The position numbers were made by a program, and so were the translations under genes. A DNA stretch of 33,534 nt from Schmidtea polychroa (Eukaryota): contig CM097885.1 in the NCBI GenBank assembly GCA_044892525.1, forward strand, positions 270,970,467-271,004,000, in the 5' to 3' direction. Positions 4,552 through 33,534 of the stretch are shown here, piece by piece (the first letter of the stretch is position 1; each line of letters opens with the position of its first letter). The notes beneath the pieces were generated by a model. That model worked only from the letters and a program-made list of their open reading frames with translations. It ran no database searches and was not told where the DNA came from.

Positions 4552-4597
<46 letters not shown>

Positions 4598-7500
4598 CAG
4601 CAACAGCAGCAGCAACAGCAGCAACAACAGCAGCAACATCAGGAAATGGCACAGAATCGCAGCCCTTATCGACAGAATTCATTGCCTCCTCAATCAGCCA
4701 ATAGCAGCAGCAGCAGCAGCAGTAGCAGCAGCAATAGCCAATTAGATATCTCCAACATGTCCAGCATATTGGGGGGGTCCCATATAAATATCGGGGAGGA
4801 CTGTGCACAAATGCCAGTTGATCCCAATGTCACCAACATCATTCACATGGACACTAGAATGTCACCAAATATCATCCAGCACCAATCACCAGTGTCCTCA
4901 TTCACCCACATACCATACAAGTTCCAACAGCCCTCTAGGCCAATATCGACAGGCCACAACAAATCGTTTGATTTATCTACCAATTGCCAGATGTACATTT
5001 CCCATTCGCCACGAGACAGCCACACGCCCCAGAGCTCCGTTGCGCCCAGTCAGCCACTGCAACAATCAATTCAATCAATGCAGAACCTGTCTGGCCCCGG
5101 CACCCCACAGAGTCCATGTGCCGGAACCAGCAAGACACCGGGCCCTCCCTCACCATCCTCTAAGGGCTCCAATATGGGGCCAATTGGTGCTAATGCCAGG
5201 ACCAATCAACAGCAGTCCCACAGTCCAAATACCGTCACCAGCATGCCTTCACCGGTTCCCTTGATGCAGTCCAGTCCTCTTGTAAGTACTTTGTTTATCG
5301 GAGTTATGGTTACTATGGTCACCTTTACCAGTTCCAGCACCAGATGAACGCGGATTACGAGTCTGGCGTGCAAGGGGCAGCATTTATAGCTGGCAAATCT
5401 GTCACACATCCTCTGACCCCAGTCAATCGGGAGGAAATTGGAGGCTTTGAACCCCCAGTTATTGTCACTCGAGTCAATATTGACAGGAAGAATTTCGGGC
5501 CAGTTGGAGTCGCCACTGGAGCTGGAGCCGGAGATGGCAATAATGTGAACAATCAGGATCAATATCGCCAGCAAATCATTATGACCGGCTCTGAAGGGGC
5601 AAATAGTGGTAGCGGCATTGCTGCATCTCCTGAGATGTACCAATCAAATCACAAGCCGCAATCTGCCATTTCAGGAAACATTATACAGCTATCCTCAGTT
5701 GGTAATAACTCTCGTTCATGTAAGCCTTTTTACTATTAATATTAATTNNNNNNNNNNNNNNNNNNNNNNNNNNNNNNNNNNNNNNNNNNNNNNNNNNNNN
5801 NNNNNNNNNNNNNNNNNNNNNNNNNNNNNNNNNNNNNNNNNNNNNNNNNNNNNNNNNNNNNNNNNNNNNNNNNNNNNNNNNNNNNNNNNNNNNNNNNNNN
5901 NNNNNNNNNNNNNNNNNNNNNNNNNNNNNNNNNNNNNNNNNGGGAGGGGGGTTACCCCTTATGTATCTCATGGTATTTATTGCTGGAATCAAATGATATT
6001 GATTGATTGGCTAAATGATTCAGTTTCCCGCCCAAGCAATGTCAATAATGACGACCCCAGAGCAATGAATACAATCCAATCAAACCCTCCCAATAGCAAT
6101 AGCAATAGCTTTATTTACCGGCCTCTGAGCAGTGCTAATATCGGCACCATCAACAGCCAATCACAGCCATCACATCTAGATGATGTCATTGCGAGTGTCG
6201 TGTCTGATTCAATAGCATATATCGATGATAGTCCCGTTACCCAATCTGTCGCATTACAAAGGCAGAATTCCATTGATTCATCCTCACCATGTCTTATCAA
6301 TTCATCTATTGCAATAACCGGTGGTTTTGATCTGGATAAATCATCAGCAGCAGTCGCATCAGCATCAGCAACAGCAGCATCAGCAGCAGCGGCATCATCA
6401 GCATCAGCATCAGCAGCAGCAGCAGCAGCGGCATCATCATCAACAATATCTGGCAATCATGATCCAGCAGCAGTTATAGAATCACCGCTTATTGCTCAAT
6501 ATCATCACCAGGCTAATAATAGCAATAATATTATGAATAATAATAATCGCTCAATCTCAAGGAATATCAACAACAACAACAACCAATTAATATTCAATTC
6601 GGCTAACACATCCAATCCAATCAGCATCAACCAGGCCAATCAATTATTGAATACAAAACAGTCACAGAACAGCTTCTGGTTGGCTACATCTTCCAATATT
6701 AATCCCGGCTCTAAGCCCCAGCAGCAAATGTGCATTTCAAATACGACTCAGCTGATTGGACAGTTTGCTAACAATCAACAGCAACCCAAAATTATCCAAC
6801 ATGGACAAAACTTATATCAGGTTTAGATTATTTCTATTGGTGATATGATATTGGGGACGGGGGCCATTTGTACTGTTGCTATTGGTGATATTATATTGGG
6901 GACGGGGGCCCATTTGTACTGTTGCTATTGGTGATATTATATTGGGGACGGGGCCCATTTGTACTGTTGCTATTGGTGATATTATATTGGGGACGGGGGC
7001 CCATTTGTACTGTTGCTATTGGTGATATGATATTGGGGACGGGGGCCCATTTGTACTGTTGCTATTGGTGATATGATATTGGGGACGGGGGCCCATTTGT
7101 ACTGTTGCTATTGGTGATATGATATTGGGGACGGGGGCCCATTTGTACTGTTGCTATTGGTGATATGATATTGGGGACGGGGGCCATTTGTACTGTTGCT
7201 ATTGGTGATATGATATTGGGGACGGGGGCCCATTTGTACTGTTGCTATTGGTGATATGATATTGGGGACGGGGGCCCATTTGTACTGTTGCTATTGGTGA
7301 TATGATATTGGGGACGGGGGCCCATTTGTACTGTTGCTATTGGTGATATGATATTGGGGACGGGGGCCATTTGTACTGTTGCTATTGGTGATATGATATT
7401 GGGGACGGGGGCCATTTGTACTGTTGCTATTGGTGATATGATATTGGGGACGGGGGCCCATTTGTACTGTTGCTATTGGTGATATGATATTGGGGACGGG

Positions 7501-14080: not shown

Positions 14081-15009
14081 ATCACATAGGATTGATCATC
14101 ATTGAGATAATTAAAAAAAAAATAAATAAAAAAATGGCGTTATTTCCTTTATTTGAATTTAAAATTTCATCATTCAAATTATTTGTTAAATATTGATTTT
14201 TCTACTGGATTTGATGATCAGCTTATGTGTTATAGTTAATCCTTCACTCATTTGATCAACATAATAATATCTGGAGCTGGATATGATTGCCCTCATTGAC
14301 AATACTATCAAATAACTCAATAAAGGCGCATTGAGAGGCCAAATATTCTAGGGCAATAGATATCCGCACATAAGCCCGAGGGGGGGGGCTGCGTTCACGT
14401 GGCAAGTTGCGGTTCATATATTCCCTTTTTTGTTGAAGGGGCGTATTCACCATTTTACTTTCGAAGCCTTTCAAGATATTTTGATGGTTATTGCTATCAG
14501 AATGTTTATTAATTGGCATAAAAAGATTAGGATCATTATTAAAAGGACGACAATAGTTATTGTTGTGTGAGTAGTGGTCCTGATAGATAGATTTAGAGTT
14601 GATTCACTCATGTTCAGATCTTTTAGGTGGAGAAGCATTATGGCGTTTATCACTAGGAGATTAGAGATCAATCTGGCATATCGCCGAAGGGGAGATTAGT
14701 TCTCAACCTTATCTGAACTGTGGCTTTTATCTATTTTGGACTTCTGATGCTAGAGTTTAAAACTGCCGCGTCAAGCGAGATTTATCCGGAACGCTTCAGT
14801 CCGGCCGCGTATCGGGTAATCCTGGCAGTCTATGGCCTTCTTGAAACTCCGGACATTGGCTCATTCATTAGTTGGTTATCTAGAAGGTATATTATTTGGA
14901 GTAGGAATACTCCGTTTGTGATTTTTATAACGTTTATATCGATATCTTCATTATAATATCAATTAGATGGAGATAAAGATAGTTGAGGTTTTTCTTTTCC
15001 CGCACTTCG

Positions 15010-15330
15010 GCAAGGATGTTCATTACGTAGTTGCGTTTCTCCACTCGGCTCCACTGTCCTGATATGCAGTGGTTAATCACATGGCTTGCCGATTCTTTGT
15101 CGTTACGCTTTCTGCATTTGGTGCTTCCTAATCGCCCTCAGGAGTTTCAGTGCTCTGTTTATTGATTGAATCATTTGCTCATCGATTACCTCTGTGATTC
15201 CCAATCCTCCCTTCTCTCGTGGGGAGTATATCACTGAATCTGTACATTATTGCTTTCTTCTCTTTCCATCCTCCATCCATATGTTATCTTTTCCTGGGGC
15301 TGATTTCTGGCTTTTTATTTCGACTGGTCT
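15010..15330 (-). mobile_element. NeSL-like fragment E: mosaic of RT region 0 (KSAPGKDNI), GGLG thumb motif and CCHC knuckle
   Basis: 15010-15139 closely matches element A at about 22273-22400 (DNA level); translated motifs YSPREKGGLGITEVIDEQMIQSINRALKLL and KCRKRNDKESASHVINHC. Confidence 0.8.
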
Positions 15331-15394
15331 TTTTTTAGTTTATTTTTTTCTTGTACAGAAATTAAAAAGATACATAATTCAAATGCTATTGAAC

Positions 15395-15530
15395 AAAAAA
15401 AATTAAATTTAAAATAAAACAAACAAATAAAAAAAAAAAAAAATTAACAAAAAAAAAATAACAAAAAAAAATAAAAAAATAAAATAAAATAACAAACATA
15501 AAAATAAAACTAAAAATAAATAAATTAGTG
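15395..15530. repeat. A-rich low-complexity tract at the hAT truncation point
   Basis: Runs of A interrupted by T/C. Confidence 0.8.
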
Positions 15531-15549
15531 ATAATACCAAAAAATTTTA

Positions 15550-16707
15550 TAATATTTAAACTGTTGCATTCCAATTTATTCTTTATAGAATCTGCCATGT
15601 CAACTGAACGTTCACTATCTAGTGAATAAAAAGACAGCAGAACATTTTGTATACCTTTTTCTTTGGTAAAATATCGCAAGACTGTAGGAAATGTTTTAAC
15701 ATTTCCTTTATTCGAAGCATCGGTACTCACAGAAAATGGAATATCACCTTTCAACTGTTCTAAAATTCTTCTTTTCGATTCCGGGGCCAAAACATTACAA
15801 ATAATTTTGGATATTTTGGTTCCTCCACAGCTGTACTTTCTTGCTATATTTGAATCAGAAAACAAACCTGAAAATATTGAACCAGCACAATCACTAGATA
15901 AAAAGCTGTGTGAATGCATGATGGTATGATAGCAAAAAGCCACTTCTGCTGATGTAACAAGTTCTTCTTCTTTGCTGCTTTTTTACAGAATAACGTAGTC
16001 AATTTTTTTGAATTTGCTGATGCAGCTATGTTGGATCGATGACCAACCGTTTTAAAGTGTCTTTTAATATCATTTTCACCACCATGTGATATAGAAAATT
16101 TTAAATTATTACACTCTGTACGAGTAATGTGATGATCACCACATTGTCGAATCCATTCATATGACTTCGTCCATTTCGGATTAAACTTTACTGTATACTT
16201 CACTTTCTTTTTATATTTCCTCTGTTTTCGTCAGAATCAATGCATTCCAAATCCGAATCAGACATTTTTAGGCTATAATTAGTACGTCTTATTAAAAAAC
16301 GAAAACCATTACAAAATTCAATATTAATATATTGAGTTTTTGAAATTAATTTTAATTTTATTCAATATAAATTATATTTAGCTTCCTATCCTAATTGTAT
16401 GATTGTATCACTTAATTTATTTAATATTTTGTTCCAAACGACCATTTTTATTAATTTAGATTCTTAGAATACACAAATAAACAATAAGTAAATTTAGACA
16501 TCAGAACAATACTTATAGGCAAAACAAAATGTCAAAAAAAGTTCACTATTTTCACCCAATTGGCATTACTTCAAAATGTTAAGTGATGACAACTGCTGAA
16601 AAAACTTAATATACAAATCGGGAGTTTTTGGCATGTATATCGGGAGTCGGGAAATATACTTTCATAACGATAGACTCCCAACGAAATCGGGAGGTCTGGC
16701 AACCCGG
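15550..16707 (-). mobile_element. 3'-truncated, frameshifted hAT-superfamily transposon (BED-like finger plus start of catalytic domain)
   Basis: ORFs 15844-16203 (FSISHGGENDIKRHFKTVGH) and 15386-15943 (HSFLSSDC...CGGTK...NVLAP...FSVSTDASNKGNVKTFPTVLRYF); terminus CCGGGTTGCCAGACCTCCCGATTT at about 16684-16707 with ATCGGGAG subterminal repeats; second TIR absent. Confidence 0.8.
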
Positions 16708-19700: not shown

Positions 19701-21230
19701 TACACACTTACATTTTTAACTTTAAAAAAATACAAATAATTCAACTATAATTAAATAAACCTATTCTGCCAAAAAAGATTTTTTTTAATTTTATATTTGA
19801 ACTTCCAAATTTCAAATAAATATTGAATTTTTAAAATTGTTTACATTTTTATTTCTAAAAATGCTTATTTTATTCAATAGATATTTTTATATTTTATTTC
19901 TAATAAAAGACCCATATCCTCTAACTTTGAGATATTTTCTGTGATAAATTTAATATTTCAAAAATTAATTTAATCTTGATTTTTATTATTAATGAATCTT
20001 GAAATAATTAAATCATACTCAAAACATTAAAAATTAAAACTGCAATAAAAACGATAATTTAAACGACAAATTTATCGTTTTTATAACATTCACTATTTTT
20101 TATCATTTTTGACAGATTTTTACAAATTTCTTCTTATAATATTCTATTTCTATATATGTTTTTGATAATCTGGTATTTTCATGGAATAGAAATATATTTA
20201 TATCATTAGATTTGACATTATTGTCAAAGTTTAATGGTTTTATGGGAGTCTCTGAATTTTTGATTTCATTTTTTTGGGCAGAGTTGCTGCGTTTTTCATT
20301 ATTGGATCTTGGTTTTTTGGCATTGTTATTGCTTCCCTGAATATTATCTGGATTCGTTTTTTGTTTTTAATTGAATAAGTAACATTTTAAAAATTATTAT
20401 TCAATTATCATTCAGAGTTTTTATTATTTTCTGTTGATAGTTCAATATTCTTTGGTAACATATTTCTTTTAAATTTAAAGATTTTTTATCTTTAAAATTA
20501 TATTTTAATATATATTTCTTTAAAGTTTAAATGTTTAGATATATTTTTAATGTTATATATAATTTTTAAGCATTTGTAGTTTAATCATTTATTTTTTATC
20601 AAAATTCTTATATAAATTTTTAGATAAATTTTCTATAAATATAATTTTTACATTCTAGTTTTTTTAATATCATCTTGATCTAAATTTTCAATAAAATTAT
20701 AAATATTAAATGGTATTGTTTTAATATTTTCGATATTTTTTTAAACCTTTCCCAGATAAAAAATACTAAAAACAAAACTTCAATTTGAAAATTACAGATG
20801 GAAATAATAAAAGTGATACACAATATGTCAAATCTTCAAGAAAATATCCAAGACAAATTTATATATCAAGAAAAAAGCCTGGAAATAATGTTAAATGTGG
20901 ATAGAAACTGGAATTTTAATATTGAAAATACAAGAAAAATTTCAAAGAATAATAAAATATTTCAAGAAAACAATAAAAATTTTAACATAAAATTAAATTT
21001 TCAAATAAATATCCATGAAAATTTAAATATTAAAAATACAAAAAATAATAAAAATAATCCAAGAAATTTTAAAAGTAATAATAAAAATCATTTAAAAAAT
21101 TTAAAATCAATTAAAAATAATTTTAAACCAATAGAAAAATTACAAAAAGAAATAAATTCAGAATTAAGCTCAATTAAAAATTACAAAAATCTTAGATAAG
21201 TCAGCAAACATTTCCCAGATGAGGAACATG
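16721..21230. repeat. Patchwork of AT-rich direct and inverted segmental duplications with N/K-rich ORF remnants
   Basis: 16770-17050 ~ 18090-18350; 17290-17489 ~ 19500-19709; 18710-18930 ~ 20810-21030; 19310-19500 ~ 20480-20710; 20220-20250 is an inverted match to about 18305-18335. Confidence 0.8.
17490..17726 (+). mobile_element. Putative Polinton/Maverick-like (or other linear DNA virus-like) terminus
   Basis: Begins AGTAG exactly where the paralogous copy at 19709 continues without it; three TGACGTCA motifs, a perfect 20-bp palindrome (17526-17545), CCCCCCGGGGG, and 27-bp repeats x3. Confidence 0.45.
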
Positions 21231-21246
21231 AGCATGAGGTGTCAGA
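21231..21246 (+). rRNA. 16-nt 28S rRNA stub (AGCATGAGGTGTCAGA), putative left half of the target site
   Basis: Matches conserved 28S AGCARGAGGTGTCAGA(AAAG); abuts the 3' end of element D. Confidence 0.6.
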
Positions 21247-21541
21247 GTCAAAATTTATTAATAAAAACAATTAAATCATCACAGGGATGAGGTAGTGAAC
21301 CTTTTGTTGTCAAAAAAGGTAGTTTATCTGGCTGCGTAAGTGAACTAGTCACTAAGATTCTGAAACATCTAGGTTATAAAACCTATGTGCTGGTCGTATG
21401 TGCTACATGATTCTTTAATTACAGCTTTTATCATCTTTTCTTTCTTATTTTTTGGCATTATCTTCATATTTAATTTGCAGTTTTCTGAAGATTTCTGTAT
21501 TTAGTTTATCCCATGTTTCGAGAGAGCATACTACGAAGGGC
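21246..21541 (-). mobile_element. NeSL-like element D: severely 5'-truncated (RLE C-terminus plus 3' UTR)
   Basis: PFVVCSLETWDKLNTEIFRKLQINMKIMPKNKKEKMIKAVIKESCSTYDQHIGFIT* (stop 21369-71), homologous to the C-termini of A and B; shares a 17-nt 3' motif with A. Confidence 0.8.
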
Positions 21542-21579
21542 ACATTTTATTACAATAAAATACATGGATATAATAAGAA

Positions 21580-24213
21580 AGTCAAAATTTATTAATGAAA
21601 AAATATCGACATAATAAATATGCCAGGCCAAATACAGTAGGCAAGCTGCTGTATGGATTATTCAATCTTCGTGAGTGCTCTGTTTTTGGGATGCTGGCAC
21701 TATCATCCAATTTCTTTTAACTTGGGTTATTGATAGAAGCCTCTCTGGTTCTTATATAACCTCTCAGTATTGAATCCTGAGTAGGTGGGCATAATTTCAT
21801 ACAAAGTGGTCTTTTAGATGAGTCCACAATTCATCGGCATTTCTTTCTCCTTGATTATTTCTTATCCATTGTTGAAGTTTCTGTGCTGGGCATAAGATTT
21901 TCTTGATCCATGTATTACTGATTCTATCATCTTGGCTCTCATTTCCTTAGTCTCTTCATATTTTATACCAAGTTGTCGTATTATTTCGTTATTCCTTGTA
22001 TCCCAAGTTCCCAATGAACAAATTACAAAGATGAATACATTGGTCTGGAGGGTAGTTTTCGCTTGTATTTCTTTTGCAATGTCTCGGTATTTTTCAATGT
22101 TCTTGGTACGGGCACTTTCAATTGCTGTTTCTTCGTCAAATGGGCATTTGATGTCAATGACCATTATTTTATCTTTCATTCGTACCACAATATCCGGTCT
22201 TAGGCTTTCATTTATCTCCTTTGGTACGGAGTCTTTTTCAAAATTGATGTTTTTCTTTTTTAGTAATTTTGCGAGGATGTTCATTACTTGATTATGCTTT
22301 TCCACACGGCTCCATTGTCTGATATGCAGTGGTTGATCACATGACTGGCCGATTCTTTATCATTACACTTTCTGCATTTGGTGCTTCCTAATCGCCCTCC
22401 CTGGTTGGCCTGCTTCATGTTCACACCCAGCATGAAGGAATCTCCAATCTGCATCTGCCAATCCTTTCGGCATCTTCCATTCCATATAATTTGATGTTTT
22501 GGCACTTCTGTTTCCTCCACTCATCAAAGAATGCCTCTCTCATCATCCAGTGAAGAGTTTCTACTTTATTTTGTGTTCTGCAGTTTATTCTGCATGTTAG
22601 TGTAGTATCATTTAGCAATAATCTCATAGTTATGCCGTGCTTTTTCTGGATTGATTGAAAAGCTTCTCTCACTCGTGTTATCCATGTTGTCTTTGCATTG
22701 GTGTTTTTCTTGTTTTTTATTGAGCCATCCAGTCATTTCAGGGCATCTTCCAATTCCTCGATTTTACTTTCAGATCTTAAGCTCGCAACTTGGATGAGCT
22801 CCTCATGAAATATCAGTCTGATTGCTCTGTGGTTACTTGTCAGGAGTTTCTTTTATAAAGTAAGCGTCTAATATATTTTTTGGAAGGTCTGCTGGAGCTG
22901 ACTCATTTTTATCGATTTCCTTTATTGCTCTTTTTGGAGCTATTGCAAATAATCTCTGTATTTGGTAAGAGCATTTGGAGATGTTGATCTTTCCACCTCT
23001 TTTGCTCTTTTGCTTAGGAGTTGTTTCATTGTATTTGTCTGTGAACCATTGAAGTACTGAGTCTATGTCGATCTGCAGTAGCTTCAATTTGAGAAGTAGT
23101 TCATCCATTTCTTTATTGTAGTTCTTTGGTTTGTTCTTTTTGATATCTTTTAATTCTTCCATAATCTGTTTTCCGATTATGTTCCTCATTTTAATTGAGT
23201 CAGGAGTCTGATAATTCAATCTTTTAGGATCATTTACAAAGTCCTCTATGAATTGTAGGGCATATACTCCACAATCATAGTCGTTTGATTGTTGAGGAAT
23301 TAATCTGTTTTCGAGTGTTTTGAAGATAATTCTTTCTTCCACTGTATTTTCCAGGAATTTATCTAGCCTGTCTTTGACTGTCTGAGTCCAAGATAATCGA
23401 GGTTTTATCCTCGTAGTTAGCCAGGTAGACAATCCAATGGCAGTTGTTCCAGTGTATAATCCAGACTATTTGTTCCATCCAATCAGGGATTCTATCTTCA
23501 TTTCATTATGAAATGATCTCAAGTTTCGGTTAATAAGCAGGTTTGCCAGTCTTGGTTCGATATATTTGATGCTCTTATTTTGAGATTGATTCTGTTCTAG
23601 GAGATTTCTGGGGTAAGTTTCCATTGCAGCCAGTGATAGTGAGCTGTTCTGAGATGGAATGTCATTGTGATCTGATTTTGTTGATCCAATTTGATTGTAT
23701 TTTTTATCACTATCTGTGTGGATTTTTACGTGGTCTTTACATTCCTTTCCCTTGAACGGTTTCTCACACTGTACACATTTGACTGATCTGCTGGTATTTT
23801 CTGGGAATACATGCTTTAGTCTGGCATGATTCCAAGCGTCTGGATAGTCTTTATAAGTTATCTGATTTCCCATACAATGGTTACATTCAACTTTGTATTC
23901 GTTATTCAGAGTAAAGTCGAATTCTGGTGCTGGTTTATTTGGATCAATTGGTCCTCCTCCTCCTGTCAGTTTCAATTTGCTTCTTGGAGTAGACAGAGAT
24001 TGTGTTTGTCTTCTTTTACTAATAGATTGCTCCTCAGTTGATGATTTAGTTCTATCTCTTTTCGTTGTTTTTGGGTTTTTATCGTTTGTTGGCTCTTTAA
24101 TTTAAGATTCCGTAGACTGGTGCATTATCTTCTTTAATAATCTTTTTTGTAGTATGATTATTTTCCAGTTTTTCTTGTACAACATTTATTGGAGTTTCTT
24201 TGATTGTTTGAGA

Positions 24214-24292
<79 letters not shown>

Positions 24293-24964
24293 TCACTCTG
24301 GATGTTTGATGTCACCTCTGGCATTGCTTCCACCACGGAATCCCTTTGCACAAGTTCATTGGGCACCGGCTCTCTCTTTTAAAACAGAGTTATACACTTC
24401 TGAAACTTGAATTGCCTACTTATTCCTACTATGGTTCTTTGGAAGAAAAACTGGAAAAAGTTTGCAACTAGTGTTTGTTCCTCCTGATTTTTGAAGACAA
24501 ATCTGTTGACCAACTCGATCAATCTGTTTATTTTCAAATTGTCCTTTTCGTCAACATTCTGTCTCTTCATCCTTGGCTTCAGATTGGTTAACCAGCCTTC
24601 AGGTACTGTGAAATATTTTGCAAAATTTGCCATATCAAATTTTGATTCTTTAAATTCATTCATATTATCCTTAATGTACCTGCTTATAATGTTGTAAGTT
24701 ATAAGCAAGGAATCATTATTCTTGAATTGGTATTTATGAGTAGCCAATAAGAACTGTTTAATTTCTACGAATGTTTCATTGGATATACTCATTTTTGCGT
24801 AGTTCTCAAAATTGTTTTTAAGAAAATTTTTCTCTTTGGTTTGTATTATCTTGGCTTGAATTTATTAACGTCAATTATCTCACTGTTGACATTGTTGTTG
24901 GTCCATTCAATCGGAATTCTTTTGATATTTTTATAATCTTTTGATCTTGGCTTTGTTTTGGTTT
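21580..24964 (-). mobile_element. NeSL/R5-group non-LTR retrotransposon A: 2 C2H2 fingers, Ulp1 (C48) protease, RT deleted, CCHC, RLE endonuclease; frameshifted
   Basis: CNHC..H..KH and CVQC..H..IH (23715-23890); HWIVY..ILDS..QQSNDYDCGVY (23250-23480); CRKC..SHVINHC; LRPDIVV..IDIKCPFD; no YADD; linker LPKNILDAYF joined directly to post-RT KLLTSN at about 22850. Confidence 0.88.
24217..24290. repeat. (AT)37 microsatellite inside the coding region of element A
   Basis: Direct reading. Confidence 0.98.
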
Positions 24965-24988
24965 TTACCACAGGGATAACTGGCTTGT
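24965..24988 (+). rRNA. 24-nt 28S rRNA stub TTACCACAGGGATAACTGGCTTGT (peptidyl-transferase region), putative right half of the target site
   Basis: Exact match to the conserved eukaryotic LSU sequence; abuts the 5' end of element A. Confidence 0.85.
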
Positions 24989-24993
24989 CTCCC

Positions 24994-25140
24994 AACGCAG
25001 ATGTCCCAAGGGAAGCTCAACTAGGACAGAAACCTGGTGTTGACTAAAAGGGGAAAAGCTTCCTTGATCTTGATTTTCAGTACGAATACAGACCGTGAAA
25101 GCGCGGCCTATCGATCCTTTTGATTTTAAAGTTAAACAAG
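24994..25140 (+). rRNA. 28S rRNA fragment (domain V, upstream of the 24965 stub in native order)
   Basis: AACGCAGATGTCC...GGACAGAAACC...CTTGATCTTGATTTTCAGTACGAATACAGACCGTGAAAGCGCGGCCTATCGATCCTT matches conserved 28S; helix-preserving changes (GGAAGCT/AGCTTCC, CTAGG/CCTGG). Confidence 0.95.
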
Positions 25141-26010
25141 TGCACATTTAAGTGCATCAAACAGGCATGGGCAAACTGTTGGAGGTCCTTCCATGACTAG
25201 AAATAGACATCAAGTGCACCTTTTTATGGATGCGGGCGCAATCATCCTTGTCCTGGCTCTTGTGCTCATGTGTGAAACCCTCTGTGTTGTTCATATGTTT
25301 TTCTTGACCCTCTGATAACTTTCTCAATCATTTGCTCTTTGGTCTCTTTGTACTCGATATATTTTATTCCAAGTTTCCGGAAAATTGAATTATTGTCCTT
25401 TATCCACGTACCTAAGGAGCAGACTATGAAGGTCTCGACTGTGGTATGCACTCCTGTCTGCTCCTTTATGTCCTTTGCAAGCTCTCTATATTTGTCCATA
25501 TTCCTCGCCCTTGCCATCTCTATGGCCCCTTTGTTGTCAAAAGGGCACTTGATGTCTATTATGAATATATGTTTGTTGGTGCGGACCACTATGTCTGGTT
25601 TTAGGGCCTCCTTCGCTTCTGGTGGAATCTTTTCTGTTTCGAAATTGATGTTTTTGGACTTCAATATCTTTTCCAAGGCCTTCTGGATTTCATTATGCTT
25701 GGCCGTCCTTGATCTGTATCCTTTTCTGCACATGTTTATGACATGTGATGGTGATTCTTGTGGGCAATCACAAAGCCTGCAATTGGTTGGAGCGATCCTA
25801 CCTCCTTGGTTGGACTGCTTCATTCCGACATCCAGCATGTTTGCCCGGGCCTTTATAATGAATTTCCATTCTGGGTCTTTTAGGACCCGGGGCATCTTCC
25901 ATTCCATTTCGTCGGATGTCGGAAGGTTTATAATATATCCTTGGCATTTTGCAGCCAATCATATTTTCGATTTATCAAAATTTTATTTAATAAAAGCCTG
26001 CCTCCGAAGA
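25141..26010 (-). mobile_element. NeSL-like element B: 5'-truncated CCHC + RLE + 3' UTR
   Basis: ORF 25266-25958: WKFIIKAR..CRLC..SHVINMC..KHNEIQ..LKPDIVV..IDIKCPFD; paralogous to A. Confidence 0.88.
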
Positions 26011-26200: not shown

Positions 26201-26272
26201 TTGTCGTAGTTGTCGTAGTTGTCGTAGTTTCCTTAGTTTCCTTAGTTGTCGTAGTTTCCTTAGTTGTCGTAG
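26201..26272. repeat. Two-variant 9-mer array (TTGTCGTAG / TTTCCTTAG; order AAABBABA) followed by a T-rich tract (26284-26331)
   Basis: Direct reading. Confidence 0.9.
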
Positions 26273-26579
26273 TTTTCATCGTATTTTTTTTTTTTTTATT
26301 TTTTTTTTATTTATTTATTTATTTTTTTTTTAAAACAAGAGCTTTTAACACAAAGACAGTAAGACAAGCAAGAAAAAATAAAAGATGGAAACACTGATAA
26401 AAAGGTGTAAAAAATAAAAATGCCATCAACGCCTTAATAAAAAGTTCGTACGATAAATACAGAAAAATCACAACAGACGCCAATATACGACCATACAAAA
26501 CAAGAGAGGATCACACACGATTCGCAGAAGCAAATCAAGTCATTTTAAGGCTATGAAAAAAAGGTCCAATGAACGCTAT

Positions 26580-29023
26580 AATCATATTTATTGGAAAGGA
26601 CTCTGAAAGAAGATAGTAGTACATTATAGTATAGTATAGATAAGGTATTTAATGTATATAATATTTGTAAATATATTCAAATTTACGTAGTAGATATTAG
26701 GGTTGCATTAATAACCTTAAGTTGTAGTACAGTATAATAACATTACAGAATAAGTATAGTAAATAATATTAATTATCAATTAATGTGTTTAAAATGTGGT
26801 CCATATAGATATTGTAGCTCGCTGTGATCGCTGTTATAATACATTTCCTAGCTAATATGTTAATTTCCCTATCAGTTAATCCTATATCTCTTAAGGGTTT
26901 ATCATTGTTGATGTCCCAGGTTCCTAAAGTCCCTACAACAAGTGCATATAATGTAGTTTTAGTTTTATTTGCAGTGCCAGTTTCAATAGCCAAGTTTCTA
27001 TATTTCTCAAAATTGTTATCTCTAGCGTTATTAAAATTTTCTATTGTGTCATACGGTACCTTAATGTCAAGTAGGTGTATTTTTTTGTTTCTATTTGAGG
27101 TTACAATTAGGTCAGGTCTTAGTGTGGTTATTGTTCCTGGTGGTGCTCTTTCTGTGTCCACATTAAAGTTTTTGGAGGTTAGATATTTATGCGTTATTTC
27201 TAATACTCTATTGTGCTTATTTCTCCTAGCATTTTGTGTTTTGGTGCAGTGGTTAAAAATATGTGCCTGTGTTTCCCAGTCTTTGCTGCATAATCTGCAG
27301 AGTATGTTTTGGTTCTCTTTGTGCCTATTTATTGTGTAATTAAGACTGAGCATGTTATTGCGTGCTTTAATTATAAAGTAATATTGGTTGTCGGTAAGAT
27401 CAGTTGATTTTATTGGGTATGCAGATAAGTTATTGTTTCCTATTGTTTTTGATATGTGTCCCTGGTGGATCATGTCATACCATTTTTCAGCTTACCATCT
27501 ACTTGTAATATTATGTAATGCCGAGGATGTGTCTCTACTAGGTTATTCTTATCTATATAATTAGTCTCATTGTTGTATTTTATTTCTAGGTTAAAAAAGC
27601 CTTTAATAACTATTATTTTGCATTGGATATTGAATTTTTCGCGGATTCTCTTACATGATTCCCTAAATTTTGAAAAAATTGTTGAAGATTTACCACTTAT
27701 GTCCCCCTTACAGTCTGCATTAAGCCAGTCTAGGGCATTATTAATATTGATTTCCTTATTTACTGATCTAATTTTGACTATCTCAATAAGTTCACTTAAT
27801 ATAAAATTTTTCATCTTAATGTCGTCTGAGTTAAATATCCTAATAAATTGGGTGATACTTTGGATTAGGTATTCATCAATGGATGGTGTGATACCTAATC
27901 CTCCTAAAGAGCAGTTCGCATAAATAAAGCTATTATTAAGATTTTGGTGTATGTCTTTCAGTTCATTTTTAATTATTCGTTTAATTTTTTGGTCATAGCC
28001 TAGTTGTTTTTCCCTATTTTGTACTACTTTATTCCTATTGCAGTCAAGTATCATATGATTGATTGTGCACGTTCGGAAAGGAAAAATAAATCGGGAGTGT
28101 ATAAAGGTTTTATATGCATGTAGTTTCTGTGCTGGGTGTAGGTCAGAGGTAAAGATCATATTTGCGTCTTCTAGTGCCTTAGATAAAATGTCATCAATGC
28201 TGTGTTTTCCCTTTTCGCCAAAACCTACACCTAGGTATCTGTAAATGTTATCGCTATCTATAATCGGGATCTTTTCATCGTATATTGTTAGTGGGATGTC
28301 AGAATGATTTTTTTGTAATTGGAAATATCCACATTTGCTTGGTCTGAATTTTAGCTTAGATCTATCGGTTAGGTTGATTATATGTTCTAATATCATCTTA
28401 ATGTTATCCCTGGAGTCTGATATTAGAACAATATCATCAGCATACGCCAATATGCTGACATTATATTCACTAATTATTAAGGGGAATTTATTTAGTATAT
28501 CCTTAAGTATGAAGTCTATTGCCAGACAAAAAAGTGTCATGGACATTGGGCACCCTTGCTTAACTCCGTTATGTATTTCTATTTCGCTAGTGAGTTGCCC
28601 TTCACAGTCATATTGTGTTTTACAATTGTTATATAAGTCTTTAAATACGTTCAACGTGTTGTTGTTAATACCTAGTTCTATCAATGTTTGCCAAATTAGT
28701 TTATGTGGGATGCTTCCAAAGGCGTCTGCTAAGTCAAGCCATATGATGTTAATATCCTTATTACTGCGAATTGCTCTTTCTTTTACTAGTGTGAGGGTTA
28801 TATTATGTTCAGAACAACCGTCAGGTATACCTATTGCTTTTTGGTTGATACTAATGAGGCCCCTTAATTTTACCCATTCAAGAAGTCTATTGTTTATTAT
28901 CGCTGAAAAGATTCTATAGGATGTATCTAAAATAGCAAGGGGTCTCCATGAGGATATATCGTAACTTAACTTCTCTTTATGTGGTTTAATTATTAGTTTG
29001 GTTTTAAAAAATTTAAAGTATGT
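26580..29023 (-). mobile_element. RLE-type non-LTR retrotransposon C, ORF2: RT + CCHC + RLE (frameshift near 27500; RT region 0 missing)
   Basis: WRPLAILDTSYRIF, WLDLADAFGSIPH, GVKQGCPMS, AYADD, YRYLG, GGLG, CRLC..AHIFNHC, LRPDLIV..LDIKVPYD. Confidence 0.93.
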
Positions 29024-31061
29024 TTAGGTCATCATCCTTGGGCGTGAGAGTTAAGTGTACATCATCAATGTCGTGAGGGAGTTGGGAGGATGCTGCTGTA
29101 TTATGTGTGAGTAGTTGTTGTTGCAATTTTGTCATCTGTGAGATTAGGAGCGCTAATGTTTCGTGTGTATTAGCTTGTTCGTGTTGTTGTTGTATTATGT
29201 ATTGTTGCAGGTTTTTTGTGGTTGTTTCATGTTTTTTGGAGATTTCTTGATTGTTACAGTTGATTATTCTGTGGATTTCTTGTATGAGATGTTTATCCCT
29301 TTTATTGTGGGTGATATTTGTATCCTTATTTGGGGACGAGTGTATTGTGGTTTCGATATTGTTATTGCATGTATTTAATGGAGTAGTGTAAGTGGTTGGT
29401 TTAGTTGTTGATTGTATTGTGTTTGATTGATTAGCTTTGATTGGGGAAGATTGAGTTTCTATGGGTTTGGTAGGGGGGGAAATGGAATGAGGTTGTGGGA
29501 CATTAGTGGTACTGTTAGTGGTGGATGTAGGAATGTTGTAGTTAGACGGTGCTGGTGGGTTTGCGTCTGTTATACTGTTTACCTTAGGGTCATTATTTAT
29601 GGTGGCTAAGGCGTGAAATCTGTTATTGGTGAGACTAGGTGTGGTTTCGTATTTGTCATTTTTGTTGGCTTGTGTTTTGGATAATGTAGTGTCATTATTG
29701 TTAGTGATGGGTAATGTGGGTACGTTCATTGTAGTGTTATTGGTCAGTGGTATTGGTTGGTCGTCTTCATTGTAGTTATTTAGCTCGTTATTATAATCTT
29801 TAAGAATATTTATGTAGGTGGGGTCTTTGTGGAACATCGTCCAAAAATGTTTCGAGAGTGTTTTTATTTCTCGGCGAAAGGTATTATTGGATATTTTCGT
29901 ATTTGGTATTTCAGCGTGTTGGTCATTGATGTTATTGTTGGGTAGAGGTTCTGCGGTTAAGTCGATAGTAAGGTCGTTTTTTGTGGTTTCGTCGTCGTCG
30001 TTGTTGGTCCGGGAGCCGGCGAATCGGCCGCAGGCCGATGAGCTGCGTAGGGGCTTATTTTTCTTGCCCGAAGGGCAAGAAAAATTTTGGAAATCATTAT
30101 TTTTCAAAAAAGGAAATTGTTTAGGTAATTTAAACAAATTTCCGATTTTGTATTTAAAATTAATTAGACTATTATCTAATTTTAATTTAAAATTATAGAA
30201 TTCATTTTCAATTTGATTTAAATTATAGTTCAATGTATTATTAATTATAAATTTATTATTATATTTGTTTTTTGGATTTTTAGAGTTATTGGATTTATAA
30301 TTTTCATTATTTAAATTATGCTTTTTATTATTATTATATTCACTATTACTTATATCATTATTATAAATATGTTGTTTAAATATATTATTATTATCATTAT
30401 TAATTAATTTAAATTTATTTTCGCCATTTTTGGCAGAGCGATTTTCGCAAAAGTAACTATATTCGTCAGGACAATAGTATTTTTTACTATTGTCAATATG
30501 AGTATTACATTCTTTATTATAATCATAGTATTTCGTATCATTATGGAGACTGTATTTTCTAATATAGTCTTCATTAATTCGATCTTCATGGGCATTATTT
30601 TTATTTATTCTGTTTATTAATTTCTCTTTATAGGAAGGTGGATTTATTTTTATTGGAGCACTTCTTTCATCATATTGGGCAGAAGAAGGATGTGGAAGAA
30701 GGTAATTGTTGGCATAGGTTTGGTTATTATTGTTTATTTTATCAATTATTTTCGCATTAAGTTCATTAATTCTCATAGTTTCATCACTGTTAGGCAGATC
30801 AGGAGTGTCAAGATAGTATGCCTTTTCATTTAACGGACGGCCATTCACGTAAGAAGTATTTTGTCTTTCATTATCAAAGCATTTAGAGGGAGAGTTACTT
30901 TCAGCAGGCATATTAGGTGAAGCAAAGCCATAGGCTGATTTCTTTATATGGTTGTCATGCGGGTAATAGTCATTATTTTTTCCTCTCATATTTGTTTGAT
31001 TCGAATTAGATATTATTGATTTATTTTTATTAGAGTAATCATAATTATCGTACCCATTCAT
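29013..31061 (-). CDS. Uninterrupted 682-aa Asn/Thr-rich ORF of unknown function, probable ORF1 of element C
   Basis: ATG at 31061 (the track's extension to 31175 is antisense of fragment F); stop overlaps the start of the RT frame; C-terminal Q-rich coiled-coil-like stretch. Confidence 0.6.
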   Translation of the reverse strand: MNGYDNYDYSNKNKSIISNSNQTNMRGKNNDYYPHDNHIKKSAYGFASPNMPAESNSPSKCFDNERQNTSYVNGRPLNEKAYYLDTPDLPNSDETMRINELNAKIIDKINNNNQTYANNYLLPHPSSAQYDERSAPIKINPPSYKEKLINRINKNNAHEDRINEDYIRKYSLHNDTKYYDYNKECNTHIDNSKKYYCPDEYSYFCENRSAKNGENKFKLINNDNNNIFKQHIYNNDISNSEYNNNKKHNLNNENYKSNNSKNPKNKYNNKFIINNTLNYNLNQIENEFYNFKLKLDNSLINFKYKIGNLFKLPKQFPFLKNNDFQNFSCPSGKKNKPLRSSSACGRFAGSRTNNDDDETTKNDLTIDLTAEPLPNNNINDQHAEIPNTKISNNTFRREIKTLSKHFWTMFHKDPTYINILKDYNNELNNYNEDDQPIPLTNNTTMNVPTLPITNNNDTTLSKTQANKNDKYETTPSLTNNRFHALATINNDPKVNSITDANPPAPSNYNIPTSTTNSTTNVPQPHSISPPTKPIETQSSPIKANQSNTIQSTTKPTTYTTPLNTCNNNIETTIHSSPNKDTNITHNKRDKHLIQEIHRIINCNNQEISKKHETTTKNLQQYIIQQQHEQANTHETLALLISQMTKLQQQLLTHNTAASSQLPHDIDDVHLTLTPKDDDLNIL

Positions 31062-31091
31062 CAATTCGATTGATATCCACGTTTTCAAAAT

Positions 31092-31440
31092 CTGAACCCG
31101 AGCCGGAGACGATAAGTCAATAGGACATATTTGAAGGACGTCCGAGCCAGTTGAATCAGCAGTGCCTCGAATCAAATAAAGTAATTAAACCTCATAATTA
31201 AGGAACTAAAAGAAACAAAACCCGAACATCGAAATACAAGGAATATTACAAAAACTGAAACTATTACAGATGGATATAAACAGCACACTGCAATGGTTTA
31301 CTGATACATATAATAGCACAATCCAGGAGTTGAGAACAAGAAAAAAGGCTAAACTCAAGATCACAAAATGCTCCCATCAGCTCCAAAGACTATATGCAAT
31401 AGCCCTAAAAAGAGCAGTCAAAGAGATATATAAAGATGAA
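31092..31440 (+). mobile_element. NeSL-like fragment F (post-Ulp1 linker), plus strand
   Basis: LQKLKLLQMDINSTLQWFTD...KCSHQLQRLYAIALKRAVKEI is homologous to element A LLKLKLLQIDIDSVLQWFTD...KCSYQIQRLFAIAPKRAIKEI. Confidence 0.85.
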
Positions 31441-31810
31441 ATTTAAAATATCTTTTATTGAATTGATTTTTATATGTTAGTAAATTTATTGTATTGGAGT
31501 TTAACATTTTTTATGTGGAATCAGATACATGTTTTTATTGTATCTGAGTTTAATAAATTTTATGTTTTTCTTGTATTTTATTGTTTTTATTTTATATTTA
31601 ATTTTATATTTAATTTAGAATCATATACGATGGATCATGACATGGATCCGATAATCAATATCAGCCGAAGATTTTATTAGAATAAATTTTGGAAATTTAA
31701 AATATCTTTTATTGAATTGATTTTAATATGGTAGTAAATTTATTGTATTGGAGTTTAACATTTTTTATTTGGAATCAGATACATGTTTATATTGTATCTG
31801 AGTTTAATAA
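31441..31810. repeat. 254-bp-period AT-rich partial duplication with a TCAGATACA...TGTATCTGA hairpin
   Basis: 31441-31555 ~ 31695-31808. Confidence 0.85.
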
Positions 31811-31845
31811 TAATACTAATAAAACTTTGGAACTTCTTCTAAGCG

Positions 31846-33534
31846 TCACTGCTCTGAACCTATCCCCAATGACTACATTCATAAAACCAAGAATTCTAAA
31901 AACCTTTCAAATTCCTAATGATAATACTAATAATTTGAACGCTGACCTGCCTGAACCAAATATGAGCCAAAGGATAAACTCTGAAGGAAACCTAATGGAT
32001 CCTGCTCAAGTCCTGCATGATCTATTCGAATCTTCTAAAGGACAGAGCCTCGAGTACCCCCCCCCCTTCCTTGCACATCGGGTGATGTTATCTCAATAAC
32101 ACTACCTGGCTTATCATTATTTTCAGATCAATCTCCTCAGGACCTTAACAGCCGTCGCCCAGTGGGCCAGTAGGAATTGAATTGTGATCTAAAGATGTCC
32201 AGGAGTATGCAAAGAGCCATGCGCAAACAATCTCATGAATCACAACAAGCCATTGACATCTGCCCGGCTGAACCCGAGCCGGAGACGATAAGTCAATAGG
32301 ACATATTTGAAGGACGTCCGAGCCAGTTGAATCAGCAGTGCCTCGAATCAAATAAAGTAATTAAACCTCATAATTAAGGAACTAAAAGAAACAAAACCCG
32401 AACATCGAAATACAAGGAATATTACAAAAACTGAAACTATTACAGATGGATATAAACAGCACACTGCAATGGTTTACTGATACATATAATAGCACAATCC
32501 AGGAGTTGAGAACAAGAAAAAAGGGTAAACTCAAGATCACTGCTCTGAACCTATCCCCAATGACTACATTCATAAAACCAAGGATTCTAAAAACCTTTCA
32601 AATTCCTAATGATAATACTAATAATTTGAACGCTGGCCTGCCTGAACCAAATATGAGCCAAAGGATAAACTCTGAAGGAAACCTAATGGATCCTGCTCAA
32701 GTCCTGCATGATCTATTCGAATCTTCTAAAGGACACAGCCTCGAGTACCCCCCCCCCCCCCTTCCTTGCACATCGGGTGATGTTATCTCAATAACACTAC
32801 CTGGCTTATCATTATTTTCAGATCAATCTCCTCAGGACCTTAACAGCCGTCGCCCAGTGGGCCAGTAGGAATTGAATTGTGATCTAAAGATGTCCAGGAG
32901 TATGCAAAGAGCCATGCGCAAACAATCTCATGAATCACAACAAGCCATTGACATCTGCCCGGCTGAACCCGAGCCGGAGACGATAAGTCAATAGGACATA
33001 TTTGAAGGACGTCCGAGCCAGTTGAATCAGCAGTGCCTCGAATCAAATAAAGTAATTAAACCTCATAATTAAGGAACTAAAAGAAACAAAACCCGAACAT
33101 CGAAATACAAGAAATATTACAAAAACTGAAACTATTACAGATGGATATAAACAGCACACTGCAATGGTTTACTGATACATATAATAGCACAATCCAGGAG
33201 TTGAGAACAAGAAAAAAGGCTAAACTCAAGATCACTGCTCTGAACCTATCCCCAATGACTACATTCATAAAACCAAGGATTCTAAAAACCTTTCAAATTC
33301 CTAATGATAATACTAATAATTTGAACGCTGGCCTGCCTGAACCAAATATGAGCCAAAGGATAAACTCTGAAGGAAACCTAATGGATCCTGCTCCAGTCCT
33401 GCATGATCTATTCGAATCTTCTAAAGGACAGAGCCTCGAGTACCCCCCCCCCCCTTCCTTGCACATCGGGTGATGTTATCTCAATAACACTACCTGGCTT
33501 ATCATTATTTTCAGATCAATCTCCTCAGGACCTT
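31846..33534 (+). repeat. Tandem array of a 691-695 bp NeSL-derived unit (2 full copies plus 1 partial, runs off the window)
   Basis: Units start at 31846, 32537, 33232; near-identical apart from poly-C length; each full unit contains the fragment F sequence. Confidence 0.95.

What the first reader, a model, noticed from the sequence alone, without database searches (positions are those of the whole stretch)
21231..25140. Ulp1-carrying RLE retrotransposon family inserting antisense into 28S rDNA beside the peptidyl-transferase centre
Seen: native 28S reads ...CAAGAGGTGTCAGA-AAAG-TTACCACAGGGATAACTGGCTTGT. Here GAGGTGTCAGA ends exactly at the 3' terminus of minus-strand element D (21246), and TTACCACAGGGATAACTGGCTTGT starts exactly at the 5'-truncated end of element A (24965). 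The next element, B, has its 3' end abutting 147 nt of the 28S sequence immediately upstream of the same site. Three junctions therefore point to one target, with about 4 nt lost, and the elements are antisense to the rRNA. Known: NeSL-group RLE elements are often target-specific (NeSL in SL1, Utopia in U2, R5 in planarian 28S near the R2 site). This site lies several hundred nt downstream of the R2/R4/R5 region. Inference: a site-specific antisense 28S family that I cannot match to a named element, although some planarian LIN families in Repbase are reported as rDNA-specific and must be excluded.
Basis: partly seen in the sequence, partly recalled or inferred. Interest (0 to 1): 0.92.

Follow-up and report, generated by a model that had tools for sequence, protein, structure and literature searches.

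The report
Antisense 28S-targeting retrotransposon relics
Broken copies of a jumping gene that inserts backwards into one exact spot of the large ribosomal RNA gene are really there, but a planarian family with the same target and orientation was published in 2015, so this is at most a new member of a known kind.

Summary
GAGGTGTCAGA ends at 21246 against the 3' end of a minus-strand element. TTACCACAGGGATAACTGGCTTGT starts at 24965. A 147-nt 28S piece (24994-25140) abuts the next element. In 121 intact eukaryotic 28S copies the 11-mer and the 24-mer lie exactly 4 nt apart, so 21247-24964 is an insertion into one 28S site, antisense to the rRNA. The site corresponds to about E. coli 23S 2432-2437.

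The elements are dead NeSL-clade elements with a restriction-like endonuclease (RLE). A (21581-24964) has zinc fingers, Ulp1, CCHC and RLE but no reverse transcriptase (RT). D is a roughly 330-nt 3' stub. B keeps only CCHC and RLE, and its 28S flank stops 10 nt short of D's.

An independent metagenome relative (L148) has a similar 3' end followed by antisense 28S at the same site. Other relatives carry Ulp1, RT and RLE in one unit.

The novelty claim fails. Kojima & Jurka 2015 (S6 Fig) show a Schmidtea mediterranea LIN family with its 5' junction at the same nucleotide, its 3' junction 3-6 nt away, and the same orientation. Repbase was not available, so I could not test whether these copies belong to LIN9_SM, LIN24_SM or LIN26_SM. 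The host is unidentified. The window is a transposon graveyard, not an rDNA array.

The parts
21229..21246 (+). 28S remnant upstream of the insertion site (sense strand; Rfam LSU model about 2793-2810)
   Evidence: The last 11 nt match the conserved 28S 11-mer exactly. 17 of 18 nt match the S. mediterranea 28S flank printed in S6 Fig. Upstream of 21229 the sequence is not 28S.
21247..21575 (-). Element D: a severely 5'-truncated 3' stub (end of the RLE coding region, then 3' UTR)
   Evidence: It ends in the 16-mer ATTAATAAATTTTGAC. Its last 21 nt are 95% identical to A's end. Its positions 43-195 are 65% nt identical to A's RLE C-terminal coding part. Its first roughly 40 nt weakly resemble the element's own 3' end (E 0.3).
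21576..21580 (-). TTTCT: a probable 5-nt remnant of antisense 28S between A's 3' end and D
   Evidence: These are the same five letters that follow the 3' end of the independent relative L148 (TTTCTGACACC). TCT recurs at D's 3' flank, so a 3-bp duplication around D is possible. This is inference; the chance of five fixed letters at one position is about 1 in 1000.
21581..24964 (-). Element A: a leader, then a broken coding region (zinc fingers, Ulp1, CCHC, RLE; RT missing), then a 3' UTR
   Evidence: The 5' junction abuts the 28S 24-mer and the 3' end carries the 16-mer. No RT hit appeared in Pfam. The full-length relative P0026 (1079 aa) maps with its N-terminal and C-terminal parts only.
21862..24792 (-). 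Coding region of A, given as one broken gene
   Evidence: It lies in seven open pieces. There are at least 2 in-frame stop interruptions, at least 4 frame changes, one (AT)37 microsatellite inside it, and one internal deletion that removes the RT, about 550 aa compared with L146.
22848..23496 (-). Ulp1-like cysteine protease domain plus the linker that precedes the RT (outer bounds)
   Evidence: Pfam Peptidase_C48 2.8e-8. PDB SENP7 2.4e-4 over the Cys box. 34-36% identity to residues 38-268 of the Ulp1-RT ORF of L146, best E 4e-28 by BLASTP.
23710..23890 (-). N-terminal C2H2-like zinc-finger region of A (approximate bounds)
   Evidence: Weak Pfam zf-BED and zf-LYAR hits. 27% identity to the zinc-finger ORF upstream of Ulp1 in L146, E 5e-5. 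Cys/His spacing was read.
21862..22520 (-). CCHC zinc knuckle plus PD-(D/E)XK restriction-like endonuclease of A (outer bounds)
   Evidence: 44% identity to P0003 of L148, E 6e-47. 45-48% identity to B's RLE ORF. Weak Pfam RmuC and L_protein_N nuclease-fold hits.
24965..24988 (+). 28S remnant downstream of the site (Rfam LSU model 2815-2838; start of the domain V strand leading into the peptidyl-transferase loop)
   Evidence: It matches intact 28S at 24 of 24 nt, starting 4 nt after the 11-mer. No chance match occurred in 100 shuffles.
24989..24993 (.). 5-nt filler at the joint between the two 28S pieces
   Evidence: It aligns with no 28S sequence.
24994..25140 (+). 147-nt 28S piece (Rfam LSU model about 2646-2800) flanking B's 3' end
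   Evidence: Rfam 131 bits, E 1e-33. 92.5% identity to L035. It ends at the first G of the 11-mer, 10 nt before D's junction.
25141..25958 (-). Element B: a 5'-truncated copy with an unbroken 230-aa CCHC+RLE ORF and a roughly 125-nt 3' UTR. Its 5' limit is undefined and lies somewhere below 26283.
   Evidence: R2 protein 9nl2_A E 1.4e-14 over the CCHC and nuclease motifs. 55% identity to P0001. Its 3' end is unlike that of A and D.
26283..31175 (-). Neighbouring element E, a related but different family (RT, CCHC, RLE, A-rich tail). It is not 28S-flanked.
   Evidence: Pfam RVT_1 3e-17. 40% identity to P0026 residues 334-1077. No 28S lies at its 3' side. Its coding region is in at least three pieces, so it has at least 2 frame changes.

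Best explanation
21229-25958 is a fossil of 28S rRNA gene sequence that was hit repeatedly by site-specific non-LTR retrotransposons of the NeSL clade, most likely the flatworm R5/LIN lineage. It was later stripped of almost all its rDNA.

Shown:
- The elements encode zinc fingers, a Ulp1-like protease, (RT), a CCHC knuckle and a PD-(D/E)XK endonuclease.
- They lie antisense to the rRNA.
- The pair A+D is bracketed by the two halves of one 28S site, with AAAG missing.
- An unrelated sample and a published planarian family have the same junctions.

Inferred mechanism: the endonuclease nicks the rRNA-sense strand just after ...GGUGUCAGA (Rfam model 2810-2813). The freed 3'-OH primes reverse transcription of the element RNA. 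That RNA's 3' end (…TTTTGAC, or …TTTTCGTC in L148) resembles the antisense target, or is extended into it by read-through. The second strand is cut before UUACC (2815), so 0-4 bp of target are lost.

Because the insert is antisense, it cannot ride on the Pol I rRNA transcript as R2 does. It must use its own promoter in the 172-nt leader, or outside transcription.

D probably entered the target remnant left at A's 3' side, which would be a second hit at the same spot. B, a different family, joined 28S 10 nt further upstream or deleted 10 more bases. A deletion or unequal exchange then joined model position 2838 of one unit to about 2646 of the next. All copies here are dead.
For: Junction strings and chance.

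Native 4-nt spacing in 121 intact 28S copies, with model coordinates.

The 147-nt 28S piece.

Orientation and position of every flank against one intact 28S reference (L035, where the 11-mer is 803-813 and TTACC starts at 818).
- Window A 5' flank starts at 818.
- Window D 3' flank ends at 813.
- Window B 3' flank ends at 803.
- L148 3' flank ends at 815.
- Published S. mediterranea LIN: 3' flank ends at 816, 5' flank starts at 818.
- All are antisense; sense-orientation scores were far lower.

Independent copy L148.

Domains.

Ulp1, RT and RLE in relatives.

NeSL/Utopia affinity.

Literature:
- PMC4640811 main text and S6 Fig report the 28S-specific planarian LIN families.
- PMC3636483 states that target-site deletions accompany all described NeSL insertions.

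No HDV-like or other ribozyme family was found in the window.
Against: - The window holds only about 190 nt of 28S in 33.5 kb, so no copy sits in an intact rRNA gene.
- No other copy from the same genome could be collected. The protein search with A's RLE found nothing, and the metagenome scan with the 3' 21-mer gave only chance hits.
- B's junction rests on a single copy and is offset by 10 nt.
- The TTTCT remnant is only 5 nt long.
- The RT of the A/B families is absent from the window, so clade placement rests on the RLE, on Ulp1 and on relatives.
- The S6 Fig text is machine-read and noisy.
- The host species is not identified.
- Of the seven relatives' contigs examined, only L148 shows 28S. 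One ends in (TAC)n, and the others either end too early or show other flanks.
Confidence: 0.8

Rival explanations
1. The copies are simply degraded members of the already named Schmidtea families LIN9_SM, LIN24_SM or LIN26_SM. In that case nothing here is new, not even at the family level.
For: The target nucleotide and orientation match the family drawn in S6 Fig. D's flank has the planarian-type GAGCA(A/T)G helix sequence. The paper lists three 28S-specific families, and the figure panels for two of them are illegible in the held text.
Against: The 5'- and 3'-terminal sequences of the one legible S6 family are absent from the window, even allowing 3 mismatches. A and D end in ...ATTAATAAATTTTGAC and B ends differently. 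The closest proteins among 1.84 billion representatives are only 43-55% identical. The host is unknown.
Confidence: 0.3
2. The 28S pieces travel with the elements, either as captured or transduced flanks or as 28S-derived terminal sequence. The elements would then insert without site preference, and the window would say nothing about a target.
For: The flanks are very short (18, 5 and 24 nt) and the locus is not rDNA. The 3' ends of A, D and L148 resemble the antisense target. Some R2 families are reported to carry 28S-derived 3' UTR sequence (PMC5035012).
Against: A+D is bracketed by the two halves of one site in the correct order and strand, which transduction at one end cannot produce. L148's flank runs 54 nt to the contig end, B's runs 147 nt, and the published copies have flanks of 50-65 nt or more on both sides across many contigs.
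Confidence: 0.07
3. A and D were made in one integration event. The reverse transcriptase reached the end of a short D template and jumped to the 3' end of an A transcript. On this view there was one hit, not two successive ones.
For: A's 3' end and D's 5' end are joined almost directly. D starts with a degenerate copy of the 3'-terminal motif. Template jumping is an established property of R2-type RTs (established knowledge, not tested here).
Against: The five bases between A and D equal the antisense target as seen in L148, and TCT flanks D on both sides. That fits a second insertion into the remnant better. A and D differ strongly (65% nt identity in coding sequence), so two different donor RNAs would be needed.
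Confidence: 0.25
4. The matches are chance, or the joints are assembly artefacts.
For: The 11-mer with up to 1 mismatch is expected 0.16 times per window by chance. The region is repeat-rich, and the window has N gaps elsewhere.
Against: The 24-mer has zero expectation. The 11-mer sits exactly at the element's terminus, on the correct strand and in the correct order. The 147-nt piece scores E 1e-33. Independent data reproduce the junction.
Confidence: 0.02

Closest known systems
28S-specific planarian LIN families LIN9_SM, LIN24_SM and LIN26_SM (NeSL clade, R5/LIN lineage; Kojima & Jurka 2015, PMC4640811, S6 Fig)
   Same: The one legible family has its 5' flank starting at the same 28S nucleotide (UUACC...). 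Its 3' flank ends within 3 nt of D's and within 1 nt of L148's. It has the same antisense orientation. It has an RLE-type architecture, and its lineage is reported to have diversified its targets.
   Different: The terminal sequences of the legible family are not in the window. B joins 28S 10 nt further upstream. The paper does not mention a Ulp1 domain for this lineage. Identity to the Repbase entries could not be tested.
R5 of planarians (Burke, Singh & Eickbush 2003, cited in PMC4640811 and PMC3636483)
   Same: It is a 28S-specific NeSL-clade element of flatworms. R5 and LIN cluster with 96% bootstrap support.
   Different: The paper is not held, so R5's site and orientation could not be compared.
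NeSL-1 of Caenorhabditis and Utopia-1_TSP of Trichinella
   Same: [quoted passage not shown] Target-site deletions occur on insertion.
   Different: Their targets are the spliced-leader and U2 snRNA genes, not 28S. The hosts are nematodes. No sequence comparison with them was possible.
Utopia elements in U2 snRNA arrays (here a turtle locus, L149)
   Same: This was the second-best hit to B's CCHC+RLE among 1.84 billion proteins (E 6e-63, 32% identity over four copies) and lies in an array of eight U2 genes.
   Different: The target and host differ, and identity is only 32%.
R2
   Same: It shares the CCHC+RLE fold (R2 structures, E 1e-14 to 1e-11), 28S specificity, and target-primed reverse transcription.
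   Different: R2 uses another 28S site and lies in the sense orientation. The strand cut first is the rRNA-antisense strand, and R2 is co-transcribed with the rRNA. It has no Ulp1. Here the first nick must be on the sense strand, and co-transcription is impossible.

Membership tests
NeSL clade of RLE non-LTR retrotransposons | An RT followed by a CCHC motif and a PD-(D/E)XK restriction-like endonuclease in one coding unit | tested here: met
   CCHC+RLE is present in A and B. The RT is missing from A and B, but it is present and contiguous in their relatives L146, L148 and L151 and in neighbour E.
NeSL clade of RLE non-LTR retrotransposons | RT phylogeny grouping with NeSL-1 and R5 | not testable with these tools
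   No named reference sequences were reachable, and A and B have no RT. The support is indirect: the best non-metagenome RLE relative lies in a turtle U2 array.
NeSL clade of RLE non-LTR retrotransposons | [quoted passage not shown] | tested here: met
   Peptidase_C48 2.8e-8 in A. SENP7 2.4e-4. The same domain lies upstream of the RT in L146, L151, L152 and L154.
NeSL clade of RLE non-LTR retrotransposons | Insertion into a specific repeated gene, with a target-site deletion | tested here: met
   AAAG is lost between the flanks of A+D. 0-2 nt are lost in L148 and in the published family.
28S-specific planarian LIN families (LIN9_SM, LIN24_SM, LIN26_SM) | Target ...GUCAGAAAAG/UUACC... of 28S, with the element antisense | tested here: met
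   One search places the flanks from the window, L148 and S6 Fig on one intact 28S reference. All lie at 813-818 and all are antisense. B lies at 803.
28S-specific planarian LIN families (LIN9_SM, LIN24_SM, LIN26_SM) | Family-level nucleotide identity to the Repbase consensus | not testable with these tools
   Repbase is not available. The termini of the one family legible in S6 Fig are absent from the window, so the copies are not that family. The other two could not be read.
28S-specific planarian LIN families (LIN9_SM, LIN24_SM, LIN26_SM) | Host is Schmidtea mediterranea | tested here: inconclusive
   D's flank resembles the S. mediterranea 28S helix (17 of 18 nt). B's flank differs in that helix. 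No host gene was identified, and no near-identical protein exists in the public collections.
R2 | Insertion at the canonical R2 site of 28S in sense orientation, co-transcribed with the rRNA | tested here: not met
   The orientation is antisense. The RLE similarity to R2 (E 1e-14) is far weaker than to the NeSL-type relatives (E 1e-57 to 1e-68). R2's site coordinates themselves were not mapped here.

The most novel reading that the evidence does not exclude
A/D and B may be two undescribed families of the flatworm R5/LIN lineage. On this reading they would differ from what is published in three ways. They carry the Ulp1 protease, so far reported only for nematode NeSL and Utopia-1_TSP. The upstream half of the 28S site alone would be enough for re-insertion, which would give head-to-tail stacks such as A-TTTCT-D. 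The B type would have shifted its junction 10 nt upstream, a small step of target drift within one rRNA helix.
Probability: 0.3. Interest if true: 0.4.

Novelty: new member of a known kind. Interest (0 to 1): 0.3.

Why it matters
Site-specific RLE retrotransposons are the main natural examples of protein-guided insertion at a single address. Most rDNA-specific ones lie in the sense orientation and depend on the rRNA transcript. A lineage that uses a site about a dozen nucleotides from the peptidyl-transferase loop in the opposite orientation must nick the other strand first and supply its own transcription. It is therefore a useful contrast for understanding how target choice and expression evolve in this group.

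That point was already made available in 2015, in a supplementary figure only. This window adds further, dead examples, an independent environmental copy, and evidence that a Ulp1 protease belongs to these elements. It does not reveal a new kind of element.

Tried and rejected
- Rfam at gathering and at E<=1 on the whole window missed the 28S pieces. Only a short stretch gave the hit. The 24-mer alone and the 11-mer region were too short to score.
- Exact look-up of the 720-aa ORF found nothing on record.
- The word-indexed protein search with A's RLE gave no hit. With P0003 it returned only P0003 itself.
- The metagenome scan with the 21-nt 3' end gave 25 loci, all chance matches with unrelated flanks.
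- The viral-contig scan for the intact site found nothing.
- Searches for the termini of the published S6 family in the window found nothing.
- The Burke 2003 (R5) and Malik & Eickbush 2000 (NeSL-1) papers are not held.
- Literature look-ups of the sample accessions for host clues found nothing.
- Pfam on ORFs elsewhere in the window, to identify a host gene, found nothing.
- A's N-terminal ORF and E's 720-aa ORF have no detectable relatives in the fetched contigs.
- I considered and rejected three ideas: that A and D are one internally deleted element (A has its own complete 3' end at 21581), that A is 5'-truncated within its coding region, and that B shares D's exact junction.
- Slip: early in my reasoning I recalled conserved 28S letters from memory. 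Every 28S statement in this report rests.


Full report
**1. Observation**

- GAGGTGTCAGA occupies 21236-21246. It is followed directly by the reverse complement of ATTAATAAATTTTGAC.
- TTACCACAGGGATAACTGGCTTGT occupies 24965-24988.
- After five filler bases, 24994-25140 is 147 nt of 28S sense strand. It scores 131 bits, E 1e-33, against Rfam LSU_rRNA_eukarya when a short stretch is searched. Whole-window Rfam runs missed it. It is 92.5% identical to an intact 28S contig, L035.
- No other 28S-like piece exists in the window.

**2. Is this one 28S site?**

I built a pattern from the window's own letters only: 11-mer, 0-12 nt, 24-mer. It found at least 120 eukaryotic 28S contigs hiding in prokaryote assemblies. 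In all 121 matches the gap is 4 nt: AAAG 115 times and AAAA 6 times.

Rfam on one of these contigs (L027) puts the 11-mer at model positions 2800-2810, AAAG at 2811-2814, and UUACC from 2815. A BLAST of that stretch against E. coli equates the site with about 23S 2432-2437. The peptidyl-transferase residues G2447 and A2451 (established knowledge) lie 10-15 nt further on, so 'beside the peptidyl-transferase centre' is fair in primary sequence.

The stretch 21247-24964 is therefore bracketed by the two halves of one site, in the right order and on the right strand, with AAAG missing. The inserted elements read on the minus strand, so they are antisense to the rRNA.

**3. Anatomy (element sense is the minus strand)**

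The 16-mer occurs twice, at 21247 and at 21581. There are therefore two elements.

*Element A (21581-24964).*
- It starts with 172 nt holding six in-frame stops before an ATG. This looks like a leader rather than a truncated ORF.
- C2H2-like zinc fingers follow.
- Next comes a Ulp1-like protease. Pfam Peptidase_C48 scores 2.8e-8 and SENP7 scores 2.4e-4. It is 34% identical, E 4e-28, to residues 116-268 of a Ulp1-RT ORF in a relative.
- CCHC+RLE follows.
- No RT is present.
- Its coding region lies in seven open pieces. There are at least two stop interruptions, at least four frame changes, one (AT)37 array inside it, and one internal deletion of about 550 aa that removed the RT.

*Element D (21247-21575).* D is a stub. 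Its positions 43-195 are 65% identical to A's RLE C-terminal coding part, and its last 21 nt are 95% identical to A's end.

*Between A and D.* The bases TTTCT lie here. The same five bases follow the 3' end of the independent relative L148 before GACACC. TCT is repeated at D's 3' flank.

*Element B (from 25141).* B keeps an unbroken 230-aa CCHC+RLE ORF. It aligns with R2 protein structures across the zinc knuckle and nuclease motifs, E 1.4e-14. Its 3' UTR is different from A's.

*Element E (26283-31175).* E is a further related element with RT, CCHC, RLE and an A-rich tail. It has no 28S at its end.

**4. Junction positions on one ruler**

I aligned every flank to the intact 28S contig L035, where the 11-mer is 803-813 and TTACC starts at 818.

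| Flank | Position on L035 |
|---|---|
| A, 5' flank | starts at 818 |
| D, 3' flank | ends at 813 |
| B, 3' flank | ends at 803 |
| L148, 3' flank | ends at 815 |
| Published S. mediterranea family, 3' flank | ends at 816 |
| Published S. mediterranea family, 5' flank | starts at 818 |

All flanks fit only in antisense orientation. B is therefore 10 nt off, not at 'the same site'. With a single copy I cannot tell a different cleavage position from a larger target deletion.

**5. Relatives**

HMMER with B's RLE against 1.84 billion representative proteins gave 1063 hits.
- The best hit is P0001, at 55% identity. It lies on metagenome contig L146, downstream of an ORF that carries Peptidase_C48 and then RVT_1.
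- P0003, at 43% identity, lies on L148. L148's 3' end ...ATTAATAAATATTTTCGTC resembles that of A and D. It is followed by 54 nt of antisense 28S, running to the contig end, at the same site.
- P0002 is a gene model spanning a U2 snRNA array (eight U2 genes) in the turtle Macrochelys suwanniensis. That is the setting of Utopia elements.
- Further relatives (L151, L152, L154) again show Ulp1 upstream of the RT. One of them ends in (TAC)n.

This fits the published statement that target specificity has diversified in this lineage.

**6. What is known**

Kojima & Jurka 2015 state that the planarian families LIN9_SM, LIN24_SM and LIN26_SM are 28S-specific members of an R5/LIN cluster in the NeSL clade. 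This is repeated in PMC5035012.

Their S6 Fig, held as noisy machine-read text, prints Schmidtea contigs in which an element's 3' end runs into ...TTTTCTG(C)ACACCTCTTGCTC... Its 5' end is preceded by ...CCAGTTATTCCTCGGGTAA. On the ruler above these are the same site and the same orientation.

The termini of that legible family are not in the window. Whether A, D and B are named families therefore stays open.

That paper mentions Ulp1 only for nematode NeSL and Utopia-1_TSP. Its presence here and in the environmental relatives is a modest addition.

**7. Mechanism**

Shown: the domains, the orientation, the junctions and the small target deletion.

Inferred:
- The first nick is on the rRNA-sense strand after ...GUCAGA(AA). 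This follows because the DNA strand continuous with that flank is the cDNA strand.
- Priming is helped by the target-like 3' end of the RNA, or by read-through into antisense 28S.
- The second cut falls before UUACC.
- Expression does not depend on Pol I, because the element is antisense. No ribozyme family was detected.
- D entered the remnant at A's 3' side. The rival is a template jump.
- B is a separate family with a shifted junction.
- A later deletion or unequal exchange joined model position 2838 to about 2646 and removed the rest of the rDNA.

The role of Ulp1 (polyprotein processing or action on SUMO) is unknown.

**8. Limits**

- The host is not identified.
- No second copy from the same genome was obtained.
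- All copies are broken or truncated.
- Clade placement lacks an RT tree with named references.
- The distance to the R2/R4/R5 sites was not checked.
- I recalled 28S letters from memory in early reasoning.

**9. Verdict**

This is a real and well-observed feature. At most it is a new member of a known kind. Interest 0.3.

Noticed in passing
window 26201-26331 and 26283-31175; L151 4400-4436: Neighbouring element E ends in an A-rich tail. In element sense it is followed by 9-nt repeats of the (CTACGACAA)n type. A full-length relative from a Logan assembly ends in (TAC)n. This suggests that some members of the group target microsatellites.
   Followed up: partly
window 31092-33534: 695-bp tandem repeats and 273-nt repeats carry, on the plus strand, a piece 34-48% identical at protein level to the Ulp1-RT linker of A and of the relative P0151. 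They also overlap the start of E's first ORF. This looks like an amplified fragment of yet another related element.
   Followed up: partly
window 14979-16203: Relic C on the minus strand is 84% nt identical to A's CCHC region and has a short RT-like piece upstream. It has no 28S flank, and the similarity ends abruptly on both sides.
   Followed up: partly
window 24217-24290: A perfect (AT)37 microsatellite lies inside element A's coding region.
   Followed up: no
window 21540-21575: The first roughly 40 nt of D weakly resemble the element's own 3'-terminal motif (77% over 31 nt, E 0.3). This could be a third, tiny head-to-tail fragment.
   Followed up: partly
window 21229-21246 versus 25120-25140: The two 28S remnants differ in the helix just upstream of the site (...GAGCATG versus ...AAACAAG). 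They may derive from two divergent 28S gene types, or one of them may have decayed.
   Followed up: no
window 1938-3000, 4486-4686, 6305-6490, 6768-7544; N runs 5748-5941 and 8150-8337: There are large tandem arrays with periods of 11 nt, 9-12 nt and 46 nt in a GC-richer left part of the window. The two N runs were left untouched.
   Followed up: no
L026-L145 (genome contigs): At least 120 assemblies labelled as bacteria or archaea contain contigs that are eukaryotic 28S rDNA. This is contamination in public prokaryote genomes.
   Followed up: no
L149 (Macrochelys suwanniensis CM065750.1, 236.34-236.39 Mb): This is an array of eight U2 snRNA genes interleaved with RLE-element copies that have been merged into one 1107-aa gene model. 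It looks like a clear Utopia-type array in a turtle.
   Followed up: partly
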